In this document: positions 378 to 55,485 of the stretch, in pieces
Layout of the letters: every line of letters begins with the position of its first letter
Position numbering within the stretch: position 1 is the first letter of the stretch
Origin: Octopus vulgaris
Lineage: Eukaryota
Length of the DNA stretch: 64,000 nucleotides
Assembly: GCA_951406725.2 (NCBI GenBank)
Contig: OX597842.1
Span: 15,686,001-15,750,000, forward strand
Direction: 5' to 3'
Translations under genes and position numbers: made by a program
Notes under the pieces: generated by a model
The model's database searches: none
What the model was told of the DNA's origin: nothing
Seen by the model: only the letters and a program-made list of their open reading frames with translations

Positions 378-449
378 AGAGTTGTTAAACTGGAGAGATT
401 TTGGAAAGTTTTTTCGTTGATTGCTTGGATATCGTTAAAACTCAAATCC
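378..449 (-). CDS. LRR exon 8 (DLSFNDIQAINEKTFQNLSSLTTL)
   Basis: 72 nt, ttccag / gtaagt, phase 2-2, no stop. Confidence 0.92.
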
Positions 450-3400
450 CTGGAAAATAAAATTGTGTCAAGAAGAACATTTATGGCAAGAAAAAGAAAA
501 AGATAATGAAGAAGAAGTAGATAATGATGATGATGATGAAGAAGAAGAAGAAAAAGGAAAAGAAGAAGGAGAAGAAGAAGAAGAAGAAGAAGAAGGAGAG
601 GAAAAAGAAGAAGGAGAAGAAGTGGAAGAGAAAGAAGAAAGAGAAGAAAAAGAAGAAGAAGAAGAAGAAGGAGGAGGAGGAGGAGGCGAGGGAGAAGAAG
701 AAGAACAAGAAGAAGAAAAAGAAGACAAAGAAGGAGAAGAGGAGCAACAAGTAGGAGATACTTCCTGAGAAGGAAACAAACACTAGTTGAGCGAAGTCCC
801 TAAATGGAAAAAATGCATGAAGGACACCATCCAAGCACCTCCCCACAACACATACACACAACTATCTTCTATAACACCAAAATTACCAACACCACCAATA
901 CCGCTGCCAGCACCACCCGCACCACACGCCATACAAATATCCCCTTCGAAATCACCTTCGTAAATTTCCCTGCAATCCACATATTGAAGCCCTAATGAAA
1001 TACATACAAAAAACTACTAACATCACACCAAAAGATCACAGCACCTAACGTTTCACCTCAAATACAAATACTCAGCATAACTAACAACGCCTTAATTTCT
1101 TGAGAAAAAACCTACCCCTTTGCGCTGGGAAATTTCCAAAGAACAATAACCAAAAGTTTATACGAAACCTGATCGTGGAAACTCCTACAACCACCGAGAA
1201 GGGTGAGAGAAAACATTCACCCTCTCCGCAGCCCAAAAAGTAAGTTGTGCATCATTTTGTTTTCCCATTTCTCTCATCATTGTTTTGCTCAAGCAAGGCA
1301 GTTTAAACGTGCGTGGACGGGGATCATTTTTCAAGTAAGGACGATTTCTAAACGACCTCAGTTCACTGGATTTGGACGGTGTAGTCATTAGTGAAGCCAG
1401 ACTGAGCGGACCACAAGTTTTCTTGCCCCTCTATGGAGGATATGAGATGTAACGATTCAGTGGCACCCGAGACAAGGCGATGAAGCTGCAATTTGGTTCC
1501 AGAAAGGTCTAGATCTAGAGATCAGTGCAGTCTTTGCGGACCCAGACGGCAACTCGTCGTCCTTTATGGGAATGGTAATGATGGTGATGCTTTCAGACTG
1601 GTCGCTGTCTATGCACCAACAAATGTTGGACATTAAGATTATTTCAGGCGTCCGGAAGCTTTTTTGGGAATGTTGCGTAGTTTAGTATTAGTAGGCGATT
1701 TCACAGAATCCTAAGATGCACGAATGGATTGTGAGGGGTCAAATGATAGAAGTGGAAACAAATGCCTCACAAACCTGCTCAGACGTTTCCAGCTGTCTGA
1801 CAAGTATCGCGCCCTCTTCAGAGTTACTGACGCACCCCCTGCCCCAGGGGACGCGCTCCTAGGTTAAGAACCACTGATCTCATGGTAAACAACATACATG
1901 ATATAGACACTGAATTACACACTAATTTTTATACACTCCCATTCACTCATCCATACACCGAGACAGGTATTTATATATAAACACAGGTATGCATTAAATA
2001 TGCCTCCTCAAGTGTCACACTGATATATATATATACCAACTATCAGAAATGCTACCACACTCACAGTCACAATCATTCGCAAACATCCCTTTAGAGAGAG
2101 AGAGAGAGAGAGGGGGGATACTTTAGATATAGAGGGCTGAGGAAGCTTAAGAGGATGGATGAGAATATATTAAATATTTAGAAACCTATCGGCAATGAAA
2201 TCCTGTGAACAAGACATATAGATTTGCTTACACTGTTAATGAATGATGTTGATGATGATGAGGATGATATCGAAATTGATGTTGTTGATGATCGATACAG
2301 ATAACAATGACGACACTAAAGTGATCAGGACGATAACAAAAAAATCGCTAATAATAATGGCGGCGAGGAGGAGGAAGTGAATTAATAGAAGAAGAAGAAG
2401 ATGGAGCAGAGGAAGAAGAGGAAAAAGAAGGAGGAGGATGAGAACGATGACAACAACAACAACAAGTTAAGACTATGTTGAAGCATCAGTGTATGAATAA
2501 AATAGTTCTAAATATACAAGCACAAAGAATATTCAAAGATGTTATTTAACGTCAACCTAGATGTATTCATCGTACATAATATACACACCGTATTACAAAC
2601 ACACGTGTTAATACGCTGCCATACACTCATTCATACACAGACATTACATATGCATGCACTAAATATTTCTCCTCAAGTATCACACTCGCATATATCTCAA
2701 ATCTCAGAAATGGGCCCACACTCACATACACACAGATTGAGAAGCAATAAAATACATCTTTAGAAAGACGGATGTCGGAGCCCTAAATGGAAGGATGGGA
2801 AAATATTACAGATTTACAAGTATATCATCAAGGAAATACTATAAAAGGAAACAGATTCAACTTACAGTTCTGTTAAACTGGACAGATTTTGGAATGTTCC
2901 TACTTTTATTTCTTGGATATTATTATCCCTCAAATTCCTGGAACATAAAATTGAGAAGAAAAGAAATTTACGTAACCGATTTGACAGAATGTTAAAGAGA
3001 ATGGCAAATCAATTCGATGATAGAAGAGATGGAAATCAGATTGCGAACGTGAGGAGCTGGTAATGATGGTGATGATAATGTTAGTGAGGTGGTATTGATA
3101 TAAATAATAATGAGTCAGGGAAGAAAATTTGGTGGTAGTGATGATGAGAAAATTATGATGTTGATGATGGGGGTAACGGTGTTGATGTTAATTATTCTAA
3201 TATTGATGGGGATTGCTATGTTTCTTCTTCTGATGAGGATGATGTCTGCGGTGGAGTTTCTCTTGGCGATGATGATGATGATGTTGAAATTTGTTAATAG
3301 TGGTGGCGATGAAGATGATAGTGTTGAAGATCCTCTGGATCTGATAGGAGTAATTTGCGAAAATAAATGATATTGATGATGATAAGGGCAATGATGAATT

Positions 3401-6400
3401 CGGCGATGGTTATTATTGAGGAGGGTGTGGAAGAGGAAGAAATGAAGAAGATGGTGGGCGGGGAAGTCAGAGATGAATATAAAGATGAAACAAAGGAGAT
3501 GAAAATATTATGAGACTTCATAACAAGGATCTTATGATGCAGATGATGGGGAGATGATGTTCATTTTCATTCTTATGATAACGATGCGGATTCGCAGCAT
3601 TTGTTGTGATGATGGATATGTCTAGAAGAAGAAGAAGAAGAAGAAGAAGAAGAAGAAGAAGAAGAAGAAAGAAGAAGAAGAAGAAGAAGAAGAAGAAGAA
3701 GAAAGAACAAGGAGAAGAAGATGAAGAAGGAGAAGAAGAAGAAGAAGAAGAAAGTAAGAAGAAAATGATGATGATGATAATGATGATGATGAAGAAGAAG
3801 AAGAAGAAGAGAAGAAGAAGAAAGAAGAAGAAGGAGAAGAAAAAGAAGAAGAAGAGGAAGAAGGAGAAGAAGAAAGTAAGAAGAAGAGGAGGAAGAAGAA
3901 GAAGGAGAAGAAGAAGAAAGAAGAAGAAGAAAGAAGAAGAATAAAGAAGAAGAAGAAGAAGAAGAAGAAGAAGAAGGAGAAGAAGAAGAAGAAAAGGAAG
4001 AAGAAGAACAACAACATCAAACGCAATAAGTTGGAGATGTGTTCAGAAAAGGGCGTATGAAACCTCTGGTGCTAAATACACAAACTGAAGTGTTATTCAA
4101 GGCAGTTACTCAGCATCGATCTAAAGGTAAACGCCGTACACATTATACACACATGCTAATATAATATTATACACACATGATAACAAACTCGTCCTTAGAC
4201 AGAGACACGTAGTGGATTTGATGTTCCCCTTAATTACCACGATCTCATATATCTCCTATCTTAAAAGTGGACCCAGACTCACATTCACAAACATCAAAAA
4301 ACAATAAATTGCATGTATAGAGAGACGGATGTAGACATTAATTTGAAGTATGGAAAGACATTACGATTTAGGAAGATATCTTCAGTGAAAAACTATAAAA
4401 GAAGATTGATTCAACTTACAGAGTTTTTAAACTGGAGAGATTTTGGAAAGTTTTTTCGTTGATTGCTTGGATATCGTTAAAACTCAAATCCCTGGAAAAT
4501 AAAATTGTGTCAAGAAGAACATTTATGGTAAGAAAAAGAAAAAGATAATGAAGAAGAAGTAGATAATGATGATGATGATGAAGAAGAAGAAGAAGAAAAA
4601 GAAAAAGAAGAAGGAGAGAAGAAGAAGAAGAAGAAGAAGAAGAAGGAGAAGAAAAAGAAGAAGGAGAAGAAGTGGAAGAAAAAGAAGGAGAAGAAAAAGA
4701 AGAAGAAGAAGAAGAAGAAGAAGGAGGAGGAGGAGGCGAGGGAGAAGAAGAAGGAGAAGAAGAAGAAAAAGAAGACAAAGAAGGAGAAGAGGAGCAACAA
4801 GTAGGAGATACTTCCTGAGAAGGAAACAAACACTAGTTGAGCGAAGTCCCTAAATGGAAAAAATGCATGAAGGACACCATCCAAGCACCTCCCCACAACA
4901 CATACACACAACTATCTTCTATAACACCAAAATTACCAACACCACCAATACCGCTGCCAGCACCACCCGCACCACACGCCATACAAATATCCCCTTCGAA
5001 ATCACCTTCGTAAATTTCCCTGCAATCCACATATTGAAGCCCTAATGAAATACATACAAAAAACTACCAACATCACACCAAACGATCACAGCACCTAACG
5101 TTTCACCTCAAATACAAATACTCAGCATAACTAACAACGCCTTAATTTCTTGAGAAAAAACCTACCCCTTTGCGCTGGGAAATTTCCAAAGAACAATAAC
5201 CAAAAGTTTATACGAAACCTGATCGTGGAAACTCCTACAACCACCGAGAAGGGTGAGAGAAACCATTCACCCTCTCCGCAGCCCAAAAAGTAAGTTGTGC
5301 ATCTTTTTGTTTTCCCATTTCTCTCATCATTGTTTTGCTCAAGCAAGGCAGTTTAAACGTGCGTGGACGGGGATCATTTTTCAAGTAAGGACGTTTTCTA
5401 AACGACCTCAGTTCACTGGATTTGGACGGTGTAGTCATTAGTGAAGCCAGACTGACCGGACCACAAGTTTTCTTGCCCCCTCTATGGAGGATATGAGATG
5501 TTACGTTTCAGTGGCACCCGAGACAAGGCGATGAAGCTGCAATTTGGTTCCAGAAAGGTCTAGATCTAGAGATCAGTGCAGTCTTTGCGGACCCAGACGG
5601 CAATCTCGTCGTCCTTTATGTGAATGGTACTGATGGTGATGCTTTCAGACTGGTCGCTGTCTATGCACCAACAAATGTTGGACATTAAGATTATTTCAGG
5701 CGTCCGGATGCTTTTTTGGGAATGTTGCGTACTTTAGTATTAGTAGGCGATTTCACAGAATCCTAAGATGCACGAATGGATTGTGAGGGGTCAAATGATA
5801 GAAGTGGAAACAAATGCCTCACAAACCTGCTCAGACGTTTCCAGCTGTCTGACAGGTATCGCGCCCTCTTCAGAGTTACTGACGCACCCCCTGCCCCAGG
5901 GGACGCGCTCCTAGGTTAAGAACCACTGATCTCATGGTAAACAACGTACATGATATAGACACTGAATTACACACTAATTTTTATACACTCCCATTCACTC
6001 ATCCATACACCGAGACAGGTATTTATATATAAACACAGGTATGCATTAACTATGCCTCCTCAAGTGTCACACAGATATATATATATATACCAACTGTCAG
6101 AAATGCTACCACACTCACAGTAACAATCATTCGCATATATCCCCTATCTTAAAAGTGGACCCAGACTTACATTCACAAACATCCAAAAACAATAAAATGC
6201 ATGTATAGAGAGACGGATGTACACCTTAAATTGAAGTATGGAAAGACATTACGCATTTAGGAAGATATCTTCAGTGAAATAGTATAAAAGAAGATTGATT
6301 CAACTTACAGAGTTTTTAAACTGGAGAGACTTTGGAAAGTGTTTTCGTTGATTGCTTGGATATCGTTATAACTCAAATCCCTGGTGAATAAAATTAAATC

Positions 6401-6582
6401 AAGAAGAACATTTATGGTAAGAAAAAGAAAAAGATGATGAGGAAGAAGTAGATAATGATGATGATGATGATGATGAAGAAGAACAAGAAGAAAAAGAAGA
6501 AGAAGAAGAAGAAGAAGGAAAAGAAGAAGGAGGGGAAGTACAAGAAGATGAAGAAGAATAAGAAGGAGGAGGAGGCGAGGGA

Positions 6583-6614
<32 letters not shown>

Positions 6615-9600
6615 AGAACAAGAAGAAAAAGAAGGGAAAGAAGGAGAAGAGGAGCAACAAGTAGGAGATACTTCCAGAGAAGGAAACAAACACTAGTGGA
6701 GCGAAATCCCGACATGGAAAAAATGCATGAAGGACACCATCCAAGCACCTCCCCACAACACATACACACAACTATCCTCTATAACACAAACATTACCATC
6801 ACCACCAATACCGCTGCCAGCACCACCCGCCATACAAATATCCCCTTCTAAATCACCTTCGTAAATTTCCCTGCAATCCACATATTGAAGCCCTAATGAA
6901 ATACATACATAAAACTACCAACATCACACCAAAAGTTCACAGCACCTAACGCTTCACCTCAAATACAAATACTCAGCATGAGTAACAACGCCTTAATTTC
7001 TTGAAAAAAAAATCTACCCCTTTGCGCTGGGAAATTTCCAAAGAACAATAACCAAAGGTTTATATGAAACCTGATCGTGGAAACTCCTACAACCATCGAG
7101 AAGCGTGGGAGAAACCATTCACCCTCGCAGCAGCCCAAAAAGTAAGTTGTGCATCATTTTGTTTTCCCATTTCTCTCATCATTGTTTTGCTCAAGCAAGG
7201 CAGTTTAAACGTGCGTGGACGGGGATCATTTTTCAAGTAAGGACGTTTTCTAAACGACCTCCGTTCACGGGATTTGGACGGTGTAGTCATTAGTGAAGCC
7301 AGACTGACCGGACCACAAGTTTTCTTGCCCTTCTATGGAGGATATGAGATGTAACGATTCAGTGGCACCCGAAACAAGGCGATGAAACTGCAATTTGGTT
7401 GCAGAAAGGTCTAGATCTAGAGATCAGTGTAGTCTTTGCGGACCCAGACGGCAATCTCGTCGTCCTTTATGTGAATGGTACTGATGGTGATGCTTTCAGA
7501 CTGGTCGCTGTCTATGCACCAACAAATGTTGGACAGTCAGATTATTTCAGGCGTCCGGAAGCTCTTTTGGGAATGTTGCGTACTTTAGTATTAGTAAGCG
7601 ATTTCAACAGAATCCTAAGATGCACGAATGGATTGTGAGGTGTCAAATGATAGAAGTGGAAACAAATGCCTCACAAACCTGCTCAGACGTTTCCAGCTGT
7701 CTGACGGGTATCGACAGGATTTCCCGAATGTGCCAATGTGGTCTTGGGCCAACCGCGTCGGGTCATCCAGGTCATATTTAGGTAAGGTTTTCATTACGAC
7801 AACGGAGAAGGGTAATATAAGTTGTCTACTTTTCCAAATCGTCAGCTATACCGTCCGCAAATTTGTGATATCTGATTTAATTTAGATTTCATAGATTTCC
7901 AGTTACTGAAAGCTGAACACGTCATACCTAGCATTCTAAGCTTACAGTGACCGGATTACAGAATTATTTATGCGGGCTTTGACAGGCGCAATTGTTAACA
8001 AGGCCTGGGGGTAGGCCCTAAAATAGCGGTTAATGCAAAATCAGATTTAGCAAGGCTTCCGTGCAAGAAATGAATGTTATACAGGGTGAGTTAGTTAAAT
8101 CCTTAAAATTGACCTTAAGGGTAAGCAGTGCAACTGATATGCTGACTGCGAGATTGGCCATTGACGAGCACTTCAGGGATAAGCACGAAGGGTGCATTAT
8201 CAGTGCTTTGAGATAGGGGGATCTAACGCTGCTCAACAGGCCCGGGTGATAGAGGCACAACGTGACAAGAAAGCTACCATTCAATCCCTGATTGACCAAA
8301 GTAGGTGTTTGGGATGAGTGCTTGGCCAAAACGTAGGTTGAATTTCTCCGATTTCCTACCGCGACTCCTGGGCAGCGAAACTGCGATGGGCTGATAACAG
8401 CTACAAAGTTAAGGGATTCTTTGACGGGCTGCACGAGGAATAAGTCGCCTAGTTTGGATGGCCTTACCTATGAACGTTATTATAGAATTCCAGATTTGAT
8501 TTAAGGCATTTTGGCAGATATCTACGACAACAAGCAACGAAATGGGAGAATTTCTAGCTCTGTGAGCCGAGGGACTCTGATACTCTATCGTCCCTTTCGA
8601 ACACGCGTGTTTTTTGTGCTCGTGAGTTTTGGATTTTTCTTGTGTCTTCAAACATGTATAATTTAGTTTGAACATTTAAAGTCTATAAAAGGGAACCTGC
8701 TTGAAGGGGGAGGTTTCCTGGACTATACGTATCGCCCTTTGGTGACGAATTTCTATCCTCTTTTGTATACTGTGAGTTTGATTTATGGCACTCGTTTTTT
8801 TATTCTTCTAAACATTGCCTCACGCCCTGGAGAAAGTAACACCCTCTCCCTCAATGCGAACAAGAGGAAAGATGTAAAAGTGTCGGCAAATGAAATCACG
8901 GCGGAGGAAATTCGAACGTCACTACAGCCAGCAAATCAATTGATACTAGCGAAATAAAGAAACATAAATTCGACAGTCACGGTTTCGCTTCCGTAGCAAA
9001 ACTCTACCAAGAAACAGTCAACATAAATATGGATGATATTTTAAAAATCAAAAATCTAATCGAAAGAAAAGGAACAAATGTCACAATGACCCCCACCCCA
9101 CCCCATGTGATATCACACAACCCACTCCATGAAGAGCTGTCACCTTCAAAAAGCTAATTCTAAATGACAAAGTTAGGTTTCCCTCCATAGTGATTCTAAA
9201 GACTGTAGTTCTCCTGCCGACCAACATCGGTCGGTGAGTTACTTACATTAACTTAAAAGTAAACTTTCCCAACGCGGTAGGCAACTTCCAAACAAACCTA
9301 AACAAACAGCTTTATAGAAGTCTGATCGTGGAAGCATTCACAGCCAGCCACTGGAGAGAAGAAAAAACATATTCACCCTCCCCTCAGCTAAAACCATATG
9401 TAACTATTCGTCCCGTTTTTTCCCCATTTTCATCCATCATGGTCTTGCTCAAGTTCAGTAGTTTAAATGTACGTGGCCTGGATCGCACTGGAAGCAAGGA
9501 AACCAATAGCAAAACAAGTCTGACAGGGCTGCAAACTTTCATGCCTCTCTACGATGGATACAAGATCTACGCGTCTCTGCGCCAGCCGAGAGGGAGTGGT

Positions 9601-15148: not shown

Positions 15149-15224
<76 letters not shown>

Positions 15225-17165
15225 AAGTTGAAAAGGAACACACGAGTTGATATATATGGTAAAAAATATCAAGATGGAAAATGCTAAAATAATTTTATAA
15301 AAAACATTTCAGTACCGGTTTCAGTCATTGAGACTTTTTCATCTGTAAGTATGGAAAAGAATTATATTTTGGAAAAATTAAAGGAATAGATTTTTAAAAG
15401 AATATTTGCATAGTGTTCAAATACAAGTGGCATTTTCTCCTCTCTCTGTCTCTCTTATTTACTCTTGTGGATTCGAGGTCGTTGTGAATTCTTGGTAGGG
15501 AAGAAGAAGAAGAAGAAGAAGAAGAAGTAGAAGAAGAAGAAGAAGAAGAAGAAGAAGAAGAAGATGAAGAAGAAGAAGAAAAATGTGGGAGTGCCATGAC
15601 AGCAGTATGTTAAATGGACAACTGCCCGGTGTTGATGTTAGTAGAATGGTCAAGTGACCCACTGTGGATGGTAGTTGTAATTGTTGAATTCCTGAAACAT
15701 CTCTTTTGAATGCTTCGATTATAAAATTTGTGTAGGTGTTATTCTAAGCAGCAATAGTGGTAAAGTTAGGAAGGAGAAGGAGGAAGACAAAGAAGAAGAA
15801 AGTGAAGGGAGAATAAGAAAGGAATATAGGTAGTATTAAAGTAGTAAGGTGTTAAATAGTCAAATTACTTAAAATTGGCACGTTAAGGATTATAGCAGTG
15901 ATTGGGACTGTTTTTAATGAATTCGTGGGAATCTATAGAGTGTATCATATTTAATAATTGCATGTGTATTTGTGTTATTCTAAGGCCGTGGCGGATATAT
16001 CGTTTGTTGTAGACGCGTTCAAAAGGGGTCTGTATTTTTCAATAAAGAGTGTTTCTTTACTGATTTGTTCCTTGTTGTAGCGTCCCTGAATTGGTAGAGG
16101 GGAAAAGTTCTGATTTTTGTTATTGGCGCAAATGTCTATGTGTTGGCTGAATGCAATTTTTCTGTTATGGGGAATTTTGATCTGGGATCTGTGCAGAGCC
16201 ATTCTTCTACGTAGACTTTTTGTTTGGCCCATGTATTGTTCTTGACACCCAGATCAGGTTAGTACATATATCAGGTTCCCCGAAGCAAATTTGAAGTTGC
16301 TTTTCACTGTGAAACGTTGTCCCTGTTCCAAAGAGAACTCTGATCCCTCAATTAAATTGACGAATATCTCACAGTTAGGTCTTCCGCAGTTTTTCACTGA
16401 CGGCTTCTGTGTTGTTGAGAGTATTCGAACTTGTGTTAGGAGACTTTTCATAGATTTGGGTTATCTCTTGCTTTTTATGATGGTGTGTGTTTGGAGGATT
16501 AAGTTCATTCTGTCTAATTTTAGCAGGGGTATGCATTGGAGGATGGTGTCGAAGGCTTCATTGTTGAGAGGGTTGTGTGTGGAGATGTATGGTAGGGCTT
16601 TTGGTTGTAAATCATTCTTTAATTTAGGATGTCTGTGTTGCTGGATGTTGAGTTGAAGAGACTGTTGAAAGCATATGTCTATTAATGAAGGTGAGTAGTT
16701 CCTGGTGATGAGTCTATCCTTTATTTCATGTAGTCGTGTGTCTCCGGTGTTTGCATCTCTTATTATAAAAGGCAGATTTTATCTGCCTCCCTTTGGGAGT
16801 TATACAAATCTACAATATAGGATTTCTTCAATTACAATTTACCTAGCAATTTTAAGAGTACAATGCATCGCGTCATGCCAGGTCCAGTTTTTAAAATTTA
16901 AACTCCAATTAAGCAAAATTTACAGAAAACTCACATTCTGGTGTGTGTGTCAAATGCTTTTCTTAGTCTGGTTTACACCACACGCAAACGCACACACACA
17001 GTGGGCAACGAATAAAGTGAAACTAGATGTAATATTTGTTTCTCTCTATCACGCTGATAGATACATGAGTAAAATGTATGGGAAGCTAACACATAAGTGT
17101 GAGTGAAAATGTTCTTGGAAGAGAGTAAATAGCCAGAGATAGTGATTTGAGGAACACTCATACAT

Positions 17166-17200
<35 letters not shown>

Positions 17201-20200: not shown

Positions 20201-23200
20201 TTTTGTCTCTATTAGTCCATTTCGTTATACCTAGTTTTATAACATTTTCATGCTGTTATATATCTATAATTATAGCCATATCGTTATATGTCACTAATTA
20301 CAATAATAATTATATATAACTGATGCTACCGATTCACATATTAATGATAATTTAGAGCTCAGGCATTCAAAGCTGATATTATTTCTGTGTGCATTCTTGT
20401 AATGATGAGTTTTCAGGTTGGCGTGTTGATTAATTTTTTGAATGATGGGCCATATTTTGGGTCACAACCGATTGTGCCCTTTGTTTATCCCCGCGAGAAT
20501 CGATGCGGGATGAAGAAATAATTATAGTTATAAGTCATTTGCATTATTCGGTAGCTTCGTAAAATCTATGTTAGCTAAGTCTAAAAGCGTTAGCGGTAAT
20601 ACACTTCGGAAACTTCATAGAAGTCCCTTTGTCTAGCTTCGTTTCATTGTCACCATTGGTCAATGAATGACTTTCTCACTGAGACTACACCGCTGTCATA
20701 TTGTTTCCCACGGCTTCGCCTGTAACCCTAGATTGAATGGAAGATGGGTGATACGCTGAGCCAAAGGGCAGCTGTGTTTGCGCCAACAAAGTATTTCCTT
20801 ATTTGACGTAATCCCTATATTTAAAGGCTGTTCCATTGTCCACCGCCTGGTAACCTACCGAATAGTAGATACTCACTCAAGATTTACACATTCGCACACA
20901 CATTCATAGCCATCCTTAAATCGCGAGTCGTGCGAGTATGTCTTGGTAACATATCTAATGCTTTTACTAATTGCTTCAGGTGCCGATGTATTTCCGAGCA
21001 GACATAGATACACTTTTATATCTCCAACCCTAACCCTGACCCAGCTGTCACATCCAACACCTGACTGGGAAACATTTACAACTAAGTAGACTGAATCAAC
21101 CTTGATCAACGTCGCAAACACCGAGCTTAGTTCATGAACTGAACCAATCACATTATGATAGAGCAGCGACATGCTAATAACTGTGTCATATCTTTCACAC
21201 ACACTGAGGTACTACAAGTAGAAACTGATACCAACTTCTCAAATGCAGCCCAAATCAATTTTCCCCTCTCATAGTCACAGGATCCACGCTCAAATCATAT
21301 CCAGTGCTATGGCAGTTTTAACAGTCAAAACAGCTCAGCTCAGATTTAATCTATTGGCTGAAGTAAAGTCATAGAGATGGGAACAGATTGCATTAAATGA
21401 TAGAATATCATAAATGCCGGACAAGAAATTCAAAGTTGTCTCTTGAATAAAGTCCAACATCTTTTTACACAAAAATATCTAAAAATCAAATGATTCTGGC
21501 AGCCATAAAGAATACTCTTCTGTTTTCTTTTGATCATGAAGGAAGTCACTTTTGAAGAAGAACATCGCTCTAGGAGAAAGTAGATCCCGTGTATATCTAG
21601 GACTGCATTTAAAAGACTATTATTTTTCATTTTAGAACCAGAAAATATTTCAATCCTAACAACTCCCACTTTTTGATGCTTAAGTAACCAAAGTAAGACC
21701 ACTCTTACATCAGTAATATTAACCGCTATGTTTAGTTATTCATCCTCAGAATATCGGCTTCCGGAATGCCCTCCATGTTCTTGTCTTCTTACCGGTGGGA
21801 ATTTATCTGTAACAATTTAAACGGAGCATTACCATCATCTCTCTCACCCATATCACACAACCAGCGAAATTAATGATCTCTACATCTTCTTCAAAACGCA
21901 GAAAGTAAAAACAAGTGGGATTTGAACTTAAAATGCAAAGAGCTAGAAAATGTCCATACCAGACCAAGTCCCACATCCCTATATTTGTTCTAGTTCAGTG
22001 GCCTCTTTAAGTACGCAAAACTCCGTAATTTAAGGACGTCCTCGGCTGGATTTTAAGTGAGAATACCGACTGCTAGATTAAATACCACAAGGTGTCATTC
22101 AACTCGATGACCTGCAGGTTCGTCAAATTTTTAACTAAATTATGAATTAAAATTTCTAAATAGTATATATCGTATATTCACCATCTGCATATATACCGAT
22201 TTCTATTTTATTCAGACAATCCCAAATGTGTAGAGAAGCAATTAAATTCGCATGAATCGATCGAATATAGTATTGGCATATTTTATTTAAACTGGAAACT
22301 TGAAATATTTAATGCCATATAACTTTTTCTACTGTAGACACAAGACCAGAAACTTTGGTGTAAGGAGAATCGATTAGATCGACCCTAGTACGCAATTGTT
22401 ACTTAATTTATCGACCCCGAAAGGATGAAAGGCAATGTCGACTTCGGCGGAATTTAAGTCAGAACGATTAATGCATTATAATACAAATCCTTTAATCTGA
22501 AATAATACTCAGGAAGAGTCGAACCCTCTCTGTACAATCTAGGATACTTTTCAGTTGAAAAGATCGAGAGATCAGCTAAATCTTAAGCTTAAAGGATTTT
22601 GTAGAATTATAACTAATGTGTTTTTATATCTAAAAAGGTATCGGGTTCATGATATCAACCTAAATTTTACCGATGACGACTTTAATAAAAATAAGTTTCA
22701 TAATACCGGACTATTTTACGTGTTTCATTTACGTAATTTCAGAGTCAGGCAATTTAAGCGGATCTCGTAATTATCTGCAGTTTAATTAGTCTAACAATAT
22801 CACTTTTAATTGTAAACGTAATATAGACATGCAATAATTAACTGTCATTCTGTTACTAAATCAGCTAATATCAATATAACTGTAACAATAAACATCTTCT
22901 ATTTAGGAAATGATGTTGCGAAATGCGGCACCCGGGGGGCAGCCCAGCAAGCAGATTTGATTAAAGTGGAAGAAGTAGGCATACCCGGCCGGATTATTTG
23001 CGTAATGTGGTTCTTCGTTGCCAGGTTCAAGTCGACTACTCACATGGCATCATTACACCGATTTCTTTGCTGCCAAATCCACACTGTATGCCATTCTTCG
23101 TCGTCTGACCTCACACCAACTGTTCACATAACCCAACTCTCATCTCTAACTCTTCCCATCGCCCAACACTTATCCGATTTTTAATTACCTACAAGGGTCT

Positions 23201-26200
23201 AACATAGACGGACAATACGCACATTTGGGGATAATAAACATATGAAAGAACAGAAGAAGAAGAAAAAGAAGAAATGGAAGAAGAAGAAGAAGAAGAAGAA
23301 GAAGAAGGAGAAAAATGAGGAAGAGCAGAACGATAAGATGTAGAAGAAGAGAAAGAAAAACGAGAATGGTAGGACAAAAACAACATCAAATCAACAACAT
23401 TAAAACAATAATAGAGGAAGTAGAAGAAGAAAACGGAGACGAAGAATATGTAGATGGAGATAATAACTAATATGATGAAAGGAAGGAAACGAAAATGACG
23501 AAAAGAAGAAGAAGACGAAGAAAAAGAGGAGGAGTGAGAAGAAGAAGAGCAAGGAAGTGGAGGAGGAGGTAATGAAGATGAAGTGGAAGTAGAAGTCAAA
23601 GAAGAAGAGGAAGGAGATGAAGAATAAGTCGGAGAAGAAAAGAAGAAGAAAGGAACAAGAATAAGTACAAGAAGAATTTTATAAATGAGTTTTATAAATG
23701 ATGTAGTTCTAAATGTACAAATGCCATCGGTATTGAAGCATGTTATTTAGCGTAAACACCAGACATAATATCCATACCGAATGATAGACACAGGTGAATA
23801 GGGATTTGTATGTTTCATAGTGATGATGAACATGGTGTTGATGCTGATGATGTTGGTGGTGAAGTTTCTCTTGTCGATGATGATGAACATATAATACCGT
23901 GTGAAAGGAAAATGACGAGAGTGAGCGAAATTACAAACATGGAAATATATCGTCAATGATATACTATAAATGAAGATTGATTTAACTTACAGTTCATATA
24001 AATTGGTCAAATATTGGAAGGTTTCTGGTTGGATTTCTTTCAGGTTATTATTGTTCAAATACCTGGAACATGAAATTGAGTCAAGATAAAACTTTATGGA
24101 ACAAGCATGTGGTTGTATATAACATATTCCAAGTAAGGAATTAGACTATGGAAATCATGAAGAGTTGATTACGGTTCTGTTGAAATTGATAATGACGATG
24201 ATGATGATGTTCAAGTGGGTGCAACTAACTGCGGTAGGATATGGTAATGAATGAACTTGATGATAAAGCTAACTTATTGCGGTAGTGTGTGGTAATGAAT
24301 GAAGTTAATGATAAAGGTAATGATGAGCCTGACAATATTGAAAACTGAGAGAAAGAAAAGTGTTGCGGATAATAATGTCGGTAATGATGATGGGAACGAA
24401 GAAATTGATAATGAATGAGAAGTAAATGAAAATCGGTAAGAAGGAGAATAAGAAAATATAGAAGAAAAATATGAAGATGACGAAAAAGTAGACGAAATGG
24501 AATATAAATAAGAATGATTAGAAATGAAGAACGACGAAGAAGAAGAAAATGAAGAAAAAGTAGAGCAGGAAGATACGAAGTAGAAGAAGAGAAAGAAAAA
24601 GAAGAATGTTAGCACAAAATCAACATCAAATCAACAACATTAAAAACAATAATTAGAAGAAGTAGAGAGAGAGAAAGAATATACAGATGGAGAAGATAAC
24701 TAAAATGATGAAACGAAGAAAAGGAAAATGATGAAAAGTAGAAGAAGGAGAAGAAGAAGAAGAAGAAGAAGATGAAGAAGAAGAAAAAGGAGAAGAAGGG
24801 GAATTAGTGTATGAATAATATACTTCTAAATATAGAATTACATGTAATATTCAATGATGTGAATTAGCATCGATCTATCGATCTGGAGGTAATCACCGTA
24901 CATAATGTGCATATCGTATTACACTCATATATGAATGCACTTCTTCAGACACAGACGCAAATACATGCATTTGCTGAAAAGTTTCCTCTCAATTCTCACC
25001 CTTTCCTATATGCCATATCTTATACATGGGGCTTCCCACTCTTTAACACACAATTACAGAAAGGTGGAGGATCATATAATCAAGTAAGGGACGATATTAC
25101 AAATATGCAAACATAGCAGCAATGATATACTATAAATAAAAACTGATTTGACTTACAGTATTTTTAAACTGGTCAGGTTTCGGAAGGTTTCAGTTTTCAT
25201 TTGATTCAGAATATTATAGTTCAAACGCCTGGAACATAAAATTGATTTAAGATGAAAATTTATGGAACAGGTTTTTGGAAGTATATAACATATTTCGAGT
25301 AAAGTATTAGACTATGGAAGTCATGAAGAGTTGATTACGGTTCTGTTGAAATTGATAATGATGATGATGATGATGTTCAAATGGGTGCAACTAACTGCGG
25401 TTGTCTATGGTAATGAATAAAGTTGATGATGAACCTGACAATGTTGACGGCTGAGAGAAAGAATCATGTTGCGGAGAATAATCTCAGTAATAATGATGGG
25501 AACGAAGAATGTTTCGGGGACCACTACCCTGGGATGATCATGAAGCAAGCAAGCGTGTGTTTATGCACGCACGAGTGTATGTAAGCATGTGTGTATGTAT
25601 GTGTTTTTCTGTATGCACGTGTGTGTTACCTCAATAGTTGAACATGAAGAACGAAGAATATTACATCTTCATAATTTATTTGTTGAAGCATTTTCTTCAT
25701 ATCACATTCATTGGTTAATCAGCCCAAGATTTCCTCAAGATGCTAAAAAGTACCTGCTCGTATTTCAAATTCCTATTCCATTACGTTACATATGTGTGTG
25801 TGTGTGGCTGTGTGTATATATGTATGTATATGCATATGTACATACGAGGGGATACACAAAAGTAACCGTAAATCTTCTCTGTAAGACAAACCCCCTTGTA
25901 GTTCAGGTTTCCGTCGATAAACTCCACTTGATGCGACTGTCAGGCATCAGTCAGCCAACCGGCGTTATCCGCTAGTGTTGTACTGCCGCGTAGTTCGTCT
26001 TTGTTTTGACGTGTTTCTGCTCAGTTCGTATGATTTTTGCAATGGCTGGAACGAAGGAACATTGTGCTTCTGTGAAATTCTGTTTACTGCTGCTGAAAAC
26101 TGCAGATGAAACAATTCTCATGCATCCCATCACAAGGATGATGCAATGGGCAAAGCACAAGTTTATGAATGGTTTTCTCGATTTAGGAATGGTCACTTGT

Positions 26201-29200
26201 CGCTTGAAAACCAACCTCATTCATGACAACCGTCGACCTCCCAAACATCATGAAAATTCATGATCTGATCCTGGAGGACTGTCACTGAGCAATTGATGAA
26301 CTTGTTGACATGTCAGTTTTGTCCTCGAGCTCCTGGCAATGAAGTTTGTGCGAGGAATTGTGAATGAAAAGCGTTCAAGCAAAATCTGTGCCTTGTTTGC
26401 TCACGGAATGTCAAAAACAGTCACGGCTGAATGCGTGTCGTTAGCTAGAATAACGGTTATGAGGTAATCCGAAAGTTTTTTCGAAGGTCATCACTGGTGA
26501 CGAAAGCTAGTACTACGGAATTTGAAGATGTTGAAGTAAGGAAAGAAATCGATGGGGGCGTTAAAAAGCATCACTTTGGAATAGGTCCAACACGGATTCC
26601 AGTAGCTGAAAAGGCGACAGGAACGTTGCATTGATTAAAAGGGAGAATTCTTTGAACACAATAAGAGTGTAAATATGTAAAACTAAGTGAATAATGTAAG
26701 GTATAACAGCCATCTCAATATGGCTAACAACAAAGTGGGGGTGTTACTGTAGCTTTTAGCCCCAGGAGATCGACGTCTCCAGCTGGCTTTAGACACACTT
26801 TCTGTGTCCTTTAGGTATTTGCAAAGGGAAGACATCCCTTCCTCGTAAGTCTCATCGTTTCCTTATATTTTGTGTAAACCGTTGTTTAAAAGATGCCAAG
26901 ACGCAAAAAATCCTCAGTTTGTCTGTGAATGTTAATTCACTGAGAATTGTAAATAAACAGAACATAAGTAAAATCTAAAATACACTTTACTTTTATATTT
27001 ATATTTTCTGTGGTAAATGTTTTTATAACATACGCTACACATTTTCAAAGTATCTTTAAAGTAATTGTTTTTCTAACAAGTCAACTTTTACAATGACTAA
27101 CGTAGTGCTTGAATTATACAACGTTCTTATTTCGCCCTTGGTTGCAGACAAGTGGTGAAGATCTCACATTTGATATTTAGGATGTCGGCTGGCAAGCTAA
27201 GACTTCATAGTTTTTATCTTACAGAATATGGCTTATTGTACTCTGTACCTTATATATCTTCGCCTTTGCAACTATACAACACATAACAAGGTTTTCTACA
27301 CTCACAACCCTTTAATTACTAGATTTATTTTGATTGTGAAATGATGTAAAGGCTTGCTGATCATCATCTTGTAGGGAAGATTTGATAATTGTATTTTTAT
27401 CACTTTTCGTTAGTCAATTCATGAGTCGTTTTGCCTTTATTGGTCCATTTCGTTAAACCTAGTTTTATTACACTTTCATGCTATTATATATATATATATA
27501 TATAATTATAGACATATCGTTATAACTCACTAATTACAATAATAATTATACATAACTGATGCTACCGATTCACATATTAATGATAATTTAGAGCTCAGGC
27601 ATTCAAAGCTGATATTATTTCTGTTTTCTTGCATTTTTTGGAATAAAGAGTTTTCAGGTTGACGCTGTTGATTAATTTTTTGAATGATGGGCCATATTTT
27701 GGGCCACAACCGATTGGGCCCTTTGTTTATCCCCGCAAGAATCGATGCCAGATGAAGAAATAATTATAGTTATAAGTCATCTGCATTATTCGGTAGCTTC
27801 ATAACATCTATGTTAGCTAAGTCTAAAAGCGTTAGCGGTAATACATTTCGGAAACTACATAGAAGCCCCTTTGTCTAGCATCGTATCATTGTCACCATTG
27901 GCCAATGGATGACTTTCTCACTGAGACTACACCGCTGTCATATTACTTCCCATGGTTTCGCCTGTAAACGTAGACTGAGTGGAAGATGGGTGATACGCTG
28001 AGCCAAAGGGCAGCTGTGTTTGCGCCAACAAAGTATTTCCTTATTTGACGTAATCCCTATATTCAAAGGATGTTCCATTGTCCACCGCCTGGTAAACTAC
28101 CGTATAGTAGATTCTCACTCAAGATTTACACATTCACACACACACATTCATCGCCATCCTTAATTCGCGAGTCGAGCGAGTATGTCTTGGCAACATATCT
28201 AATGCTTTTACTAATTGCTTCAGGTGCCAATGTATTTCCGAGCAGTCATAGATACTCTTTTATGTCTCCAACGCTAAACCTAACACAGATGTCGCATCCA
28301 ACATTTGACTGGTACACATTTACAGCTGAGTAGACTGGATCAATCCTGATCAAAGTCCCAAACACCGAGATTAGTTCAAGAACTGAACCAATCACATTAT
28401 GATCGTGCAGCGACATGCTAATCACTGTGTCATATCTTTCACACACACTGACGTACTACAAGTAGAAACTGATACCAACATCTCAAATGCAGCCCAAAAC
28501 AATTTTCCCTCTCATCAACAAGTCACTGGATCCACACTCAAATCATATCCAGTGCTATGGCAGTTTTAACAGTCAAAACATTTCAGCTCAGATTTAATCT
28601 ATTGGCTGAGGCTAAAGTCGCAGAGATGGGAACAGATTGCAAAAAATGATAGAATATCATAAAATGCCTTACAAGAAATTCAAATTTGTATCTTGAATAA
28701 AGTCCAACACCTTTTCACACAAAAACATCAAAAAATCAAAGGATTCTGGCAGCCATAAAGAATTCTCTTCTGTTTTCTTTTGATCATGAAGGAAGCCACT
28801 TTTGAAGAAGTACATCACTGTGGGAGAATGTAGATCCCGTGTATATCTAGGACGGAATTTAAAAGACATTTTTTTTTTATGGGAATCAGAAAATATTTCA
28901 TCCCTCAACAACTCCCACTTTTTGACGCTCAAGTAACCAAAGTAAGACCACTCTTTTTATTAACATTCCTTCAGTAATATTAACCGCTATGTTTAGTTCT
29001 GCATCCTCAGAACATCCGCTTCTGGAATCCCCTCTACGTTCTTGTCTTCTATCCTGCGGGAATTTATCTGTAACAATTTAAACGGAGCATTACCATCCTC
29101 ACTCTCACCCATATCACACAACCAGCGAAATTAATGAGCTCTACTCCTTCTTCAAAACGCAAATTTGAAGTGGGATTTGAACTTAAAATGCAGAGAGCTA

Positions 29201-32200
29201 GAAAATTTACATACGGGACCCAGTCCGACATCCCTACACTCTGTCTAGTCCACTGGCCTCTTTAGGTACGCAAAAAGCCGTACGTTAAGGACGACCTCGG
29301 CTAGATTTTAAGTCTGAATACCGAATGCTATATTAAATACCAAAAGGTGTCATTCAACTCGGCAGCTTGCAGGTTCGGCCAATTTTTGATTAAATTATGA
29401 ATTAAAATTAAGAAAATTTAAAATTTCTAAACAATATATATCGTATATTCACCATCTGCAAATATATGGATTTCTATTTAATTCAGACAATCCCAAATGT
29501 GTAGAGAAGCAAGCGAATTCGCTTGAATCGATCGAATATAGTATTGGAATATTTTATTTAAATTGGAAACTTGAAATATTTAGTGCCATATAACTTTTTC
29601 TACTGTAGACACAAGACCAGAAATTTTGGAGGAAGGTGAGTCGATTAGATCGGCCCTAGTACGCAATTGTTACTTAATTTATCGTCCCCGAAAGGATGAA
29701 AGGCAAAGTCGACTTCGGCGGAATTTTAAGTAAGAACGATTAATGCAATATAATACAAATCCTTTAATCTGAAATAATACTCAGGAAGAGTCGAACCCAC
29801 TCTGTACAATCTACGGTACTTTTCAGTTGAACTGTAACAGAGAGATCAACTAAATCTTAAGCTTAAAGAATTTTGTAGAATTATAACTAATGTGTTTTTA
29901 TTTCTAAAAACCTATCGGGTTTATGATATCAACCTAAATTTTACCGATGACGACTTTAATAAAAATAAGTTTCATAATACCGGACTATTTTACACGTTTC
30001 ATTTACCCAATTTCAGAGTCAGGCAATTTAAGCTGATCTCGTAATTATCTGCAGTTTAATTAGTCTAACAATATCACTTTTAATTATAAACGTAATATAG
30101 TACAGCAATAATTAACTGTCATTCTGTTACTAAATCAGCTAATATCAATATAACTGTAACAACAAACATTTTAAATTTAGGAAATGATGTTGCGAAATGC
30201 GGCACCCGGGGGGCAGCCCACCAAGCCAATTTGATAAAATTGGAGGAAGTAGGCATAACCGGCCGGATTATTTTCGTAATGTGGTTCTTCGTTGCCAGGT
30301 TCTTGGTCGTCTGACCTCAAACCAACTGTTCACATCAGCCAACTCTCATCTCGAACTCTTCCCATCGCCCAACTCTTATCCGATTTTAATTACCAACAGG
30401 GGTTTAACATAGACGGACAATACGCACATTTGGGGACAATTATCATATGAAAGAACAGAAGAAGAAGTAGAAGAAGGAGGAGAAGAAGAAGAAGAAGAAA
30501 TGGAAGAAGAAGAAGAAGAAGAAGAAGAAGAAGAAGAAGAAGAAGAAGAAGAAGAAAAATGTGAAAGTGCAGGACGATAGGATGTGGAAGAAGAGAAAGA
30601 AAAACAAGGATGGTAGGACAAGAACAACATCAAATCAACAACATTAAAACAATAAGTAGAGGAAGTGTAGAAGAAAAAGAAAACGGAGACGAAGAATATG
30701 TAGAAGGAGATAATAACTAATATGATGAAAGGAAGGAAACGAAAATGACGAAAAGAAGAAGAAGAAAAAGAGGAGGAGTAAGAAGAAGAAGAGCAAGGAA
30801 GTGCAGGAGGAGGTAATGAAGATGAAGTGGAAGTAGAAGTTAAAGAAGAAGAGAAGGAGGTGAAATAAGTAGGAGAAGAAGAGAAGAAGAAAGGAACAAG
30901 AATAAGTTCAAGAAGAATTTTATAAATGAGTTTTATAAATGACGTTGTTCTAAATGTACAAATGCCATCGGTATTGAAGCATGTTATTTAGCGTAAACAC
31001 CAGACATAATATCCATACCGAATGATAGACACAGGTGAATAGGGATTTGTATGTTCATAGTGATGATGAACATGGTGTTGATGCTGATGATGTTGGTGGT
31101 GAAGTTTCTCTTGTCGATGATGATGAACATATAATACCGTGTGAAAGGAAAATGACGAGAGTGAGCGAAATTACAAACATGGAAATATATCGGCAATGAT
31201 ATACTACAAATGAAGATTGATTTAACTTACAGATACTTTAAATTGGTCAAATATTGGAAGGTTTCTGGTTGGATTTCTTTCAGGTTATTATTGTTCAAAT
31301 ACCTGGAACATGAAATTGAGTCAAGATAAAACTTTATGGAACAAGCATGTGGTTGTATATAACATATTTCGAGTAAGGAATTAGACTATGGAAATCATGA
31401 AGAGTTGATTACGGTTCTGTTGAAATTGATAATGACGATGATGATGATGTTCAAGTGGGTGCAACTAACTGCGGTAGGATATGGTAATGAATGAACTTGA
31501 TGATAAAGCTAACTTATTGCGGTAGTGTGTGGTAATGAATGAAGTTAATGATAAAGGTAATGATGAGCCTGACAATATTGAAAACTGAGAGAAAGAAAAG
31601 TGTTGCGGATAATAATGTCGGTAATGATGATGGGAACGAAGAAATTGATAATGAATGAGAAGTAAATGAAAATCGGTAAGAAGGAGAATAAGAAAATATA
31701 GAAGAAAAATATGAAGATGACGAAAAAGTAGACGAAATGGAATATAAATAAGAATGATTAGAAATGAAGAACGACGAAGAAGAAGAAAAAGAAGAAAAAG
31801 TAGAGCAGGAAGATACGAAGTAGAAGAAGAGAAAGAAAAAGAAGAATGTTAGCACAAAATCAACATCAAATCAACAACATTAAAAACAATAATTAGAAGA
31901 AGTAGAGAGAGAGAAAGAATATACAGATGGAGAAGATAACTAAAATGATGAAACGAAGAAAAGGAAAATGATGAAAAGTAGAAGAAGGAGAAGAAGAAGA
32001 AGAAGAAGAAGAAGAAGAAGAAGAAGAAGAAGAAGAAGAAGAAGAAGAAGATGAAGAAGAAGAAAAAGGAGAAGAAGGATAATTAGTGTATGAATAATAT
32101 ACTTCTAAATATAGAATTACATGTAATATTCAATGATGTGAATTAGCATCGATCTATCGATCTGGAGGTAATCACCGTACATAATGTGCATATCGTATTA

Positions 32201-53990: not shown

Positions 53991-54189
53991 TGTTAGGAAC
54001 TTTTCATGTTCCAGTCTAATCTGTTGTGCGTAGAGGAAGTAATAATTCTTTCTTCTAAATACAAATGGGCTGCTTTTTTCCTAATTTTGGCGGTGGGGAC
54101 TAGATGATTACATCGACCCCAGTGTTTTACTGGTACATAATTTATCAACTCCGAAAGGATCAAATGTAAAATCGATTTCGCCGCCTTAA

Positions 54190-55485
<1,296 letters not shown>

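What the first reader, a model, noticed from the sequence alone, without database searches (positions are those of the whole stretch)
378..31302. Variation concentrates in the beta-strand xxLxLxx positions, which are split across exon junctions
Seen: exons 2 and 4 are identical except 4 nt in two adjacent codons (KY versus YE) just before the donor. Exons 6 and 8 differ only at the equivalent site (KT versus TT); exons 5 and 6 differ at SY/SF among others. Spliced strands read KLLYLNN, KYLRLNY, KILYLNN, YELDLSY, KTLDLSF, KTLNLRD, TELDLSF. Known: these x positions form the concave ligand-binding face of LRR solenoids and are the hypervariable sites in VLRs. Inference: each strand is made from the 3' end of one exon plus the 5' end of the next, so skipping or reordering creates new binding-surface combinations, not just length variants.
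Basis: partly seen in the sequence, partly recalled or inferred. Interest (0 to 1): 0.72.

Follow-up and report, generated by a model that had tools for sequence, protein, structure and literature searches.

The report
Fast-evolving binding face in octopus receptor exons
The window holds the start of an Octopus vulgaris gene of the octopus-specific adhesion-GPCR family, whose ligand-binding domain is built from recently duplicated 72-base exons (one leucine-rich repeat each), and the codons for the binding face, which sit at both exon ends, change far faster than the rest of the exon and the neighbouring introns.

Summary
Eight 72-nt exons lie on the minus strand. All are in phase 2, with the intron inside a Leu codon.

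The exons are the front of a 21-exon LRR array. It follows a signal-peptide/LRRNT exon (window 39861-40042) and precedes LRRCT, a Cys-rich region, a hormone-receptor-like region, GAIN and GPS exons to the left of the window. This is the octopus-specific "ADGRG6-like" adhesion-GPCR family, and the genome is Octopus vulgaris. At this locus the TM1 exon is frame-shifted, TM2-7 were not found, and no deposited protein matches.

In 44 unique exons, the five xxLxLxx positions have the highest entropy, with complete separation from the other x positions. Their pN/pS is about 3 (95% CI 2.2-4.1), against 0.75 for other x and 0.21 for consensus positions. Between close copies they differ at 13% of bases, against 1.5-4% in flanking intron.

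So variation does concentrate on the junction-split β-strand, most likely through diversifying selection after tandem exon duplication. The splicing idea was not tested for this gene. O. sinensis and O. vulgaris relatives do have annotated isoforms that lack single LRR exons. The general pattern is already known from brown-algal ROCO genes and other LRR receptor families.

The parts
39861..40062 (-). First coding exon. About 20 nt of 5'UTR follow an acceptor. The ATG is at 40042. It codes a signal peptide, an LRRNT Cys cluster (CSICRC...C) and the start of LRR1. It ends TT|gtaagt (phase 2), and joins the A of ex1 to give Leu.
32436..32507 (-). LRR exon 1 (YLNNNNLNVIKPETFRNLPSLKL), 72 nt, phase 2-2
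31231..31302 (-). LRR exon 2 (YLNNNNLKEIQPETFQYLTNLKY)
25157..25228 (-). LRR exon 3 (RLNYNILNQMKTETFRNLTSLKI). It is the duplicate of exon 1 in the 7.2-kb unit. The exon differs at 13/72 nt, while its introns differ at about 2.6%.
23991..24062 (-). LRR exon 4 (…QYLTNLYE). It is the duplicate of exon 2. The 4 nt differences all lie in the x2 and x3 codons.
6309..6380 (-). LRR exon 5 (DLSYNDIQAINENTFQSLSSLKT)
4420..4491 (-). LRR exon 6 (DLSFNDIQAINEKTFQNLSSLKT). It is identical to two further copies just left of the window.
2866..2937 (-). LRR exon 7 (NLRDNNIQEIKVGTFQNLSSLTE). It is identical to the copy at C29:15683018, and the flanks show 0/800 differences.
378..449 (-). LRR exon 8 (…QNLSSLTT). 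It differs from exon 6 by 1 nt, in the x2 codon.
20251..37315 (.). About 7.2-kb tandem unit (two exons plus introns). The intron part is present three times, at 90-98% identity.
1..8100 (.). About 4.05-kb tandem unit present twice (94-99% identical). It carries exons 8/7 and 6/5. The array continues left of the window.

Best explanation
**What it is.** The eight exons are the first LRRs of the extracellular domain of a member of the octopus-specific LRR-bearing adhesion-GPCR family in Octopus vulgaris. NCBI names this family 'ADGRG6-like'.

Each 24-residue repeat is one 72-nt exon. The intron sits after the second base of the Leu4 codon of LxxLxLxxN. The concave-face β-strand (x2 x3 L x5 L x7 x8) is therefore coded half by one exon and half by the next.

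**How the array grew (shown).** It grew by recent tandem duplication of one- and two-exon units together with their introns.

**What happened next (inferred from rates).** After duplication, the codons for the five solvent-exposed β-strand residues accumulated amino-acid changes several times faster than synonymous sites or flanking intron. The structural L/N/F codons stayed under purifying selection. This is the signature of diversifying selection on a ligand-binding surface. The likely biological sense is diversification of recognition specificity across repeats and paralogues.

**Splicing (possible, not shown).** The symmetric phase makes any exon loss, gain or skip in-frame and always re-forms a Leu. 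Alternative splicing could therefore add combinations, but this was not shown for this gene.
For: **Anatomy**
- Exon structure and splice sites.
- Pfam LRR_8, E = 2e-55.
- Same-strand downstream exons match octopus family proteins at 52-92% identity, through LRRCT, Cys-rich, hormone-receptor-like and GAIN regions.
- Pfam GPS, E = 8e-15.
- Family context: Ritschard 2019, PMC6408891.

**Duplication**
- Tandem units.
- Intron identity between duplicates is 0-8% divergence.

**Variation in 44 unique exons**
- Entropy is 2.36-3.29 bits at x2, x3, x5, x7, x8, against 0.36-2.29 bits at the other x positions (Mann-Whitney p = 2e-4).
- Changes counted along a minimum spanning tree (MST) that links each exon to its nearest relatives give nonsynonymous/synonymous counts of 114/6 (concave), 74/13 (other x) and 13/17 (consensus).
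- Nei-Gojobori pN/pS is 2.95 for concave codons (bootstrap 95% CI 2.2-4.1), 0.75 for other x and 0.21 for consensus.
- On close tree edges, concave codons differ at 13.3% of bases. Other x differ at 1.7%, consensus at 0.5% and intron flanks at 1.5-4% (Fisher p = 3e-21).
- The ranking is the same when pairs are chosen by intron similarity alone.
- The direction is the same in 124 repeats from 20 octopus proteins, but the contrast is weaker (p = 0.034).

**Structure**
- AlphaFold model with pTM 0.76; strands span x3-L4-x5-L6-x7.
- Nearest solved folds are Nogo receptor, LGR4 and VLR (TM about 0.72).
Against: - The locus may not be a working receptor. The TM1 exon has a 1-nt frame shift.
- No TM2-7 exons lie within 117 kb downstream.
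- One LRR exon is decayed.
- No deposited protein model matches.
- The rate analysis compares paralogous exons on a minimum spanning tree, not orthologues on a phylogeny.
- Synonymous counts are small.
- Intron flanks next to exons may be under splicing constraint.
- Gene conversion among copies was not modelled.
- ex1 vs ex3 differ all over the exon, so acceleration is not confined to the concave codons.
- Pfam did not confirm the Cys-rich or hormone-receptor-like regions at this locus.
Confidence: 0.72

Rival explanations
1. Neutral decay. The locus is a dying pseudogene, and the variable codons are simply unconstrained.
For: The TM1 exon is frame-shifted and TM2-7 are missing. There is one decayed exon with a GTCAGC donor and Asn9->Tyr. 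No annotated protein matches.
Against: Neutral sites cannot evolve faster than introns or synonymous sites. Concave codons run 3-9 times faster. Consensus codons have pN/pS 0.21. All 21 canonical exons keep an open frame, an AG acceptor and a GTAAGT donor. The same pattern is seen in exons from other loci of the family.
Confidence: 0.08
2. A mutational process rather than selection. Short gene-conversion tracts or complex multi-base mutations at exon ends shuffle the end codons between copies.
For: Changes are often multi-base within a codon, as in AAG TAT -> TAT GAA. Some copies have completely identical flanks, which suggests ongoing homogenisation.
Against: The variable codons sit at both exon ends and are bracketed by conserved sequence. 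Donor +1..+8 differs at 0.3%, and the exon core at 0.5-1.7%. Conversion tracts would therefore have to be about 6 nt long. The 'YE' pair of exon 4 occurs in none of the other 43 unique exons. A 114:6 nonsynonymous-to-synonymous ratio is not expected from conversion alone.
Confidence: 0.1
3. Regulated skipping of LRR exons is used to generate many binding surfaces from one gene, in the manner of Dscam or protocadherins.
For: Exons are symmetric, and all 210 forward junctions code Leu. These would give 107 distinct strands, against 18 in the constitutive order. O. sinensis isoforms X2-X6 each lack one LRR, and O. vulgaris CAI9744518 and CAI9744517 differ by three LRRs.
Against: There are no transcript data for this gene. 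The isoforms are computed models, and several involve near-identical exons where mis-mapping is likely. There is no sign of the selector or docking elements known from mutually exclusive splicing (not searched for). Symmetric LRR exons are common in genes not known to diversify this way, such as the gonadotropin receptors (PMC11378527).
Confidence: 0.15
4. Assembly artefact. The near-identical tandem copies are alleles or collapsed repeats wrongly laid out in tandem, so the 'paralogue' differences are polymorphisms.
For: ex7 and its copy have 0/800 flank differences. The region is rich in repeats and microsatellites.
Against: Copies show graded divergence from 0 to 14% with differing intron lengths. 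Runs of near-identical LRRs are also present in independently assembled O. sinensis proteins.
Confidence: 0.05

Closest known systems
Octopus-specific adhesion-GPCR expansion ('group 3' of Ritschard et al. 2019, PMC6408891; NCBI 'adhesion G-protein coupled receptor G6-like')
   Same: Same gene family. Downstream exons match its members at 52-92% identity. Genes are clustered in tandem on the chromosome. Some members have LRRs. Branch-level positive selection was reported.
   Different: That study found no individual sites under positive selection. It did not describe the exon-per-repeat structure. Here the fast sites are located: the LRR concave positions. This particular locus lacks a recognisable TM2-7.
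Brown-algal LRR-ROCO genes (Zambounis et al. 2012; PMC11378527)
   Same: 72-bp LRR exons in one symmetric phase, heavy exon duplication and shuffling, positively selected sites on the concave side, and multiple splice variants.
   Different: Unrelated protein (ROC-COR GTPase, intracellular, an alga). Here the LRRs form the ectodomain of an animal adhesion-GPCR relative.
Lamprey and hagfish variable lymphocyte receptors
   Same: Same LRR class and fold (hagfish VLR 2o6q is among the fold hits). Hypervariability lies on the concave β-strand positions (established knowledge).
   Different: VLR diversity is made somatically, by copying cassettes into an incomplete gene. Here complete germ-line exons with splice sites carry the variation. 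No evidence of somatic assembly was sought or found.
Glycoprotein-hormone receptors / LGRs
   Same: One LRR per exon of about 72 bp, with all introns in phase 2 (as cited in PMC11378527). LGR4 is a close fold match.
   Different: Those genes are conserved single-copy receptors, without recent exon duplication or fast concave sites.
Tetrahymena 90-bp-exon LRR arrays (PMC6564038)
   Same: Tandem arrays of equal-length LRR exons with phase-2 introns and a 'junction' residue coded by two exons. They expanded by unequal crossing-over, with LINE-like elements nearby.
   Different: Exons are 90 bp, the organism is a ciliate, and the proteins are different.

Membership tests
Extracellular 'typical' LRR domain with capping motifs | Tandem 24-residue LxxLxLxxNxLxxLxxxxFxxLxx repeats | tested here: met
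   Pfam LRR_8 E = 2e-55 and LRR_4 E = 1.5e-29. AlphaFold solenoid with pTM 0.76. Nogo receptor and LGR4 fold hits at TM 0.72.
Extracellular 'typical' LRR domain with capping motifs | Signal peptide plus Cys-rich LRRNT and LRRCT caps | tested here: met
   Exon 0 reads MFQQLKLTFVLILSMSFCLES…CSICRC…C. The LRRCT exon …MMCGCHLPALVNY… aligns to family proteins at 64-72% identity. Pfam did not call the caps itself.
Adhesion GPCR (class B2) | GAIN domain ending in a GPS motif | tested here: met
   Pfam GPS E = 8e-15 on the exon at C29:15555089-15554937 (…CSCDHLTSFALL).
Adhesion GPCR (class B2) | Seven-transmembrane domain (7tm_2) after the GPS | tested here: not met
   Only a TM1 exon was found, and it carries a 1-nt frame shift. 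tblastn with two full-length relatives finds no TM2-7 within 117 kb downstream on either strand. Intact relatives do have 7tm_2.
Octopus-specific aGPCR expansion (Ritschard group 3) | Closest relatives are the octopus ADGRG6-like proteins, clustered in tandem | tested here: met
   Best hits are O. vulgaris, O. sinensis and O. bimaculoides ADGRG6-like proteins, several on the same chromosome. Dozens of related exons lie on C29 between 13 and 16.3 Mb.
Exon-shuffled, diversifying LRR receptor genes (brown-algal ROCO type) | Equal-length (72 bp) LRR exons in one symmetric phase, duplicated in tandem | tested here: met
   21 canonical exons of 72 nt, all phase 2-2. Tandem units with their introns.
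Exon-shuffled, diversifying LRR receptor genes (brown-algal ROCO type) | Positive selection at concave-side residues | tested here: met
   Pooled pN/pS 2.95 (CI 2.2-4.1) at x2, x3, x5, x7, x8, against 0.75 and 0.21 elsewhere. The rate exceeds that of intron flanks. This is a counting method on paralogues, not a likelihood site model.
Exon-shuffled, diversifying LRR receptor genes (brown-algal ROCO type) | Alternative splicing of LRR exons | not testable with these tools
   No transcript data. Only annotation-level isoforms in relatives are available.
Variable lymphocyte receptors | Somatic assembly of LRR cassettes into an incomplete germ-line gene | not testable with these tools
   The germ-line sequence shows ordinary spliceable exons. 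Nothing suggests cassette copying.
Dscam/protocadherin-type alternative exon arrays | Regulated choice among tandem alternative exons | not tested
   No RNA data, and no search for selector elements. The exons here are additive repeats of one domain, not alternatives for one slot.

The most novel reading that the evidence does not exclude
Octopus neurons or sucker cells use regulated skipping among these symmetric, junction-split LRR exons to display many different binding surfaces from a single adhesion-GPCR-family gene. This would be a splicing-based recognition code, working on top of germ-line diversifying selection, and comparable in logic to Dscam1 or the clustered protocadherins.
Probability: 0.1. 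Interest if true: 0.8.

Novelty: new member of a known kind. Interest (0 to 1): 0.5.

Why it matters
Octopuses expanded a family of adhesion GPCRs that is expressed in suckers, skin and the arm nerve cord. Nobody knows what these receptors bind. The published selection analysis found fast branches but no fast sites (PMC6408891).

This analysis places the fast sites on the concave LRR face and shows that the repeats are still being duplicated. That points to the ligand-binding surface as the target of selection. It also gives a concrete set of residues and exons to test for chemotactile, cell-recognition or immune roles.

In addition, it adds an animal example to the 'one exon per repeat, symmetric phase, diversifying concave face' design, otherwise known from brown algae.

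Tried and rejected
- **Single-frame motif scan.** A six-frame scan for LxxLxLxxN found nothing useful, because the motif is split by the intron. Success came only after requiring AG…GT around 72 nt in phase 2.
- **Genome fetch limit.** I worked round this with 150-190-nt stretches.
- **Search for a deposited protein.** Three database searches for a protein model of this gene found only paralogues. Queries were 564 aa, 1130 aa scored on the non-LRR part, and 253 aa. Best identities were 48%, 83% and 57%.
- **Whole-genome 7tm_2 scan.** It listed none near the locus, but only 150 of 422 candidates were scored. I therefore checked directly with tblastn.
- **Pfam on the downstream regions.** Pfam on the Cys-rich and hormone-receptor-like region gave no family. 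'Ly6/uPAR-like' is only my reading of the Cys spacing.
- **Rejected: bacterial-style gene content.** The window is eukaryotic.
- **Rejected: ADGRA (GPR124/125).** I first guessed this as the family. The best relatives are the ADGRG6-like group.


Full report
**1. What is in the window**

The sequence is eukaryotic, with microsatellites, LINE debris and long tandem units. It is G000:C29:15686001-15750000 of a 2.8-Gb genome. C29 is 34,562,309 bp long. That is exactly the contig length recorded for several Octopus vulgaris proteins found later, so the genome is O. vulgaris.

A scan for AG-72 nt-GT in phase 2 with an LRR-like translation finds eight of them, at 32436-32507, 31231-31302, 25157-25228, 23991-24062, 6309-6380, 4420-4491, 2866-2937 and 378-449. 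Each starts with the third base of a Leu codon and ends with CT, the first two bases of the next Leu codon.

Every difference and every spliced strand named in the finding is correct.

**2. The gene**

- **Start.** Upstream, at window 39861-40042, lies a first coding exon with a signal peptide and an LRRNT Cys cluster. It ends TT|gtaagt and joins exon 1 to give Leu.
- **LRR array.** To the left of the window the array continues. An nhmmer profile finds 20 canonical 72-nt exons in all. There is also a decayed one (donor GTCAGC, Asn9 replaced by Tyr) and a divergent last LRR.
- **Downstream exons.** Further downstream on the same strand, tblastn with octopus proteins finds exons for the LRRCT, a Cys-rich region, a hormone-receptor-like region, GAIN and GPS, at 52-92% identity. 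Pfam calls LRR_8 (E = 2e-55) and GPS (E = 8e-15).
- **Relatives.** The best relatives are O. vulgaris, O. sinensis and O. bimaculoides 'adhesion G-protein coupled receptor G6-like' proteins. Intact ones carry LRR + GPS + 7tm_2. This is the octopus-specific adhesion-GPCR expansion described by Ritschard et al. 2019. It is expressed in axial nerve cord, suckers, skin and gills. That study found branch-level positive selection but 'no specific amino acid sites' under selection (PMC6408891).
- **State of this locus.** The TM1 exon reads …GISLACLILI*. The family sequence resumes one base out of frame (IIFYVCSK). No TM2-7 exon lies within 117 kb downstream. Three database searches find no deposited protein for this gene. 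The locus may be a truncated or recently broken copy, or the assembly may carry an indel there.

**3. How the array was built**

The exons sit in tandem units that include their introns.

- A unit of about 7.2 kb carries exons 1+2 and again 3+4. A third copy of the intron part is also present.
- A unit of about 4.05 kb carries exons 8/7 and 6/5.
- Shorter units of about 0.9 kb lie just left of the window.

Intron sequence 20-420 nt from the exons differs by 0-3% for the youngest pairs (ex2/ex4, ex6/ex8, ex9/ex10). For ex7/ex11 it differs at 0/800 bases.

**4. Is variation concentrated on the β-strand positions?**

I collected 58 exon copies, of which 44 unique sequences were analysed (the divergent last LRR was left out). 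They comprise the exons of this gene plus paralogous exons from C29, C9, C10 and C8.

*Entropy.* It is 2.36-3.29 bits at x2, x3, x5, x7, x8. It is 0.36-2.29 bits at the 11 other x positions, with no overlap (Mann-Whitney p = 2e-4). It is at most 1.34 bits at the L/N/F positions (mean 0.30).

*Change counts and rates.* Changes were counted along a minimum spanning tree (MST) that links each exon to its nearest relatives.

| Class | Nonsyn / syn changes on the tree | pN/pS against pooled synonymous rate | Base differences on close edges, <8 nt apart |
|---|---|---|---|
| Concave (x2, x3, x5, x7, x8) | 114 / 6 | 2.95 (bootstrap 95% CI 2.2-4.1) | 13.3% |
| Other x | 74 / 13 | 0.75 | 1.7% |
| Consensus L/N/F | 13 / 17 | 0.21 | 0.5% |
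| Intron flanks | n/a | n/a | 1.5-4% |

For the close edges, the concave-versus-intron contrast gives Fisher p = 3e-21.

*Independent pairing.* When pairs are chosen by intron similarity alone, which is independent of the exon, the ranking is the same: 32.7% concave, 9.6% other x and 5.2% consensus.

*Wider family.* Across 124 repeats from 20 octopus proteins the direction holds, but the contrast is weaker (3.30 vs 2.83 bits, p = 0.034). All x positions vary at that depth.

*Window alone.* Inside the window the evidence is modest (p = 0.0015 by base, 0.023 by codon). ex1 vs ex3 shows whole-exon acceleration (13/72 nt against about 2.6% in introns), not only at concave codons.

**5. Structure**

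A single-sequence AlphaFold model of exon 0 plus the eight window exons has pLDDT 74.8 and pTM 0.76. Its β-strands are at residues 60-65, 84-88, 108-112, 132-136, 156-158, 180-182, 204-209 and 228-232. The junction Leu residues are 61, 85, 109 and so on. Each strand therefore starts at x3 in one exon and runs through L4, x5, L6, x7 in the next.

The nearest solved folds are Nogo receptor, netrin-G ligands, LGR4, hagfish VLR, LRRTM2 and LRIG1 (TM about 0.7). That these strands line the concave binding face is established knowledge for this LRR class. I could not measure surface exposure, because the tool returns no coordinates.

**6. Most likely mechanism**

*Shown.* Tandem exon-plus-intron duplication, symmetric phase-2 exons, β-strands split across junctions, and the highest variability at the five exposed strand positions.

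*Inferred.* The excess over synonymous and intron rates, together with strong conservation of the scaffold codons, indicates diversifying selection on a ligand-binding surface after duplication.

Neutral decay cannot give rates above intron rates. Short conversion tracts are unlikely, because the variable codons are bracketed by highly conserved sequence, and because the 'YE' variant has no donor among the sampled exons.

**7. The splicing idea**

Any forward junction among the 21 exons still codes Leu. All 210 possible junctions would give 107 distinct strands, against 18 in the constitutive order.

There are no transcript data for this gene. In a relative, O. sinensis isoform X1 (1208 aa) is accompanied by X2-X6 (1184 aa each). 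Each of these lacks a different single 24-aa LRR, cut exactly after the junction Leu. X3 and X6 create strands absent from X1 (TKLSLEH, KSLILRN). Two O. vulgaris models differ by three LRRs.

These are computed annotations, and several involve near-identical exons. They are a lead, not proof. 'Reordering' is seen only at the genomic level.

**8. Comparison with what is known**

The design has been described in brown-algal ROCO genes: 72-bp LRR exons in one phase, exon shuffling, positive selection at concave sites, and splice variants (Zambounis 2012; PMC11378527). Phase-2 LRR exons are known from the gonadotropin receptors (same source). Equal-length phase-2 LRR exon arrays with a junction residue are known from Tetrahymena (PMC6564038). 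Hypervariable concave positions are textbook for VLRs and plant resistance proteins.

Two things are new here. The setting is an animal adhesion-GPCR family specific to octopuses. And the fast-evolving sites are located, which the earlier study of this family did not find.

**9. Verdict**

The splicing part is untested. The finding is a new member of a known kind, of moderate interest.

Noticed in passing
C29:15553393-15553563 (left of the window) and 117 kb downstream: The TM1 exon of the gene has a 1-nt frame shift relative to paralogues (…LACLILI* and then IIFYVCSK in the next frame). No TM2-7 exons were found. The copy is either broken or truncated, or the assembly has an indel.
   Followed up: partly
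window 2866-2937 and C29:15683018-15683089: Two identical LRR exons have 400-nt flanks on each side that are also identical (0/800 differences). This is a very young duplication, a conversion event, or an assembly duplication.
   Followed up: partly
window 32436-32507 vs 25157-25228: Exon 1 and exon 3 differ at 13 of 72 nt, while their flanking introns differ by only about 2.6%. The whole exon is accelerated, not just the concave codons.
   Followed up: partly
C29:15586393-15586464: A decayed LRR exon lies within the array. Its donor has changed to GTCAGC, and the conserved Asn9 is replaced by Tyr. It is probably skipped or dead.
   Followed up: no
C29:15572383-15572574: The Cys-rich region after the LRRCT has lost two Cys that are present in relatives (CC -> CY and LCN -> LGN). 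From the spacing, these look like one disulfide pair lost together.
   Followed up: no
window 9238-9981 (+), 42226-43047 (+), 45620-45979 (-): LINE remnants. There is an Exo_endo_phos ORF in the 17.6-kb intron between exons 4 and 5. zf-RVT and RVT_1 ORFs lie upstream of exon 0 (all below Pfam cut-off, E about 1e-5 to 1e-4).
   Followed up: partly
window 480-760, 3620-4010, 4560-4790, 54000-55600: Long (GAA)n/(GAT)n microsatellites sit inside the duplicated introns. An A/T-rich trinucleotide tract at 54-55.6 kb has GC about 27%. These are possible substrates for unequal crossing-over.
   Followed up: no
G000:C9:114397140-114397291: A copy of the exon-2 unit (exon plus 40-nt flanks) lies on a different chromosome at 95% identity. 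The units have therefore dispersed as well as duplicated in tandem.
   Followed up: no
genome-wide (C29, C30, C31, C8, C10 and others): More than 50 copies of a conserved last 7tm_2 exon (profile positions 148-250) were found, besides a separate cluster of about 30 intronless 7tm_2 genes on C9:28.2-28.9 Mb. Both point to very large class-B GPCR expansions.
   Followed up: no
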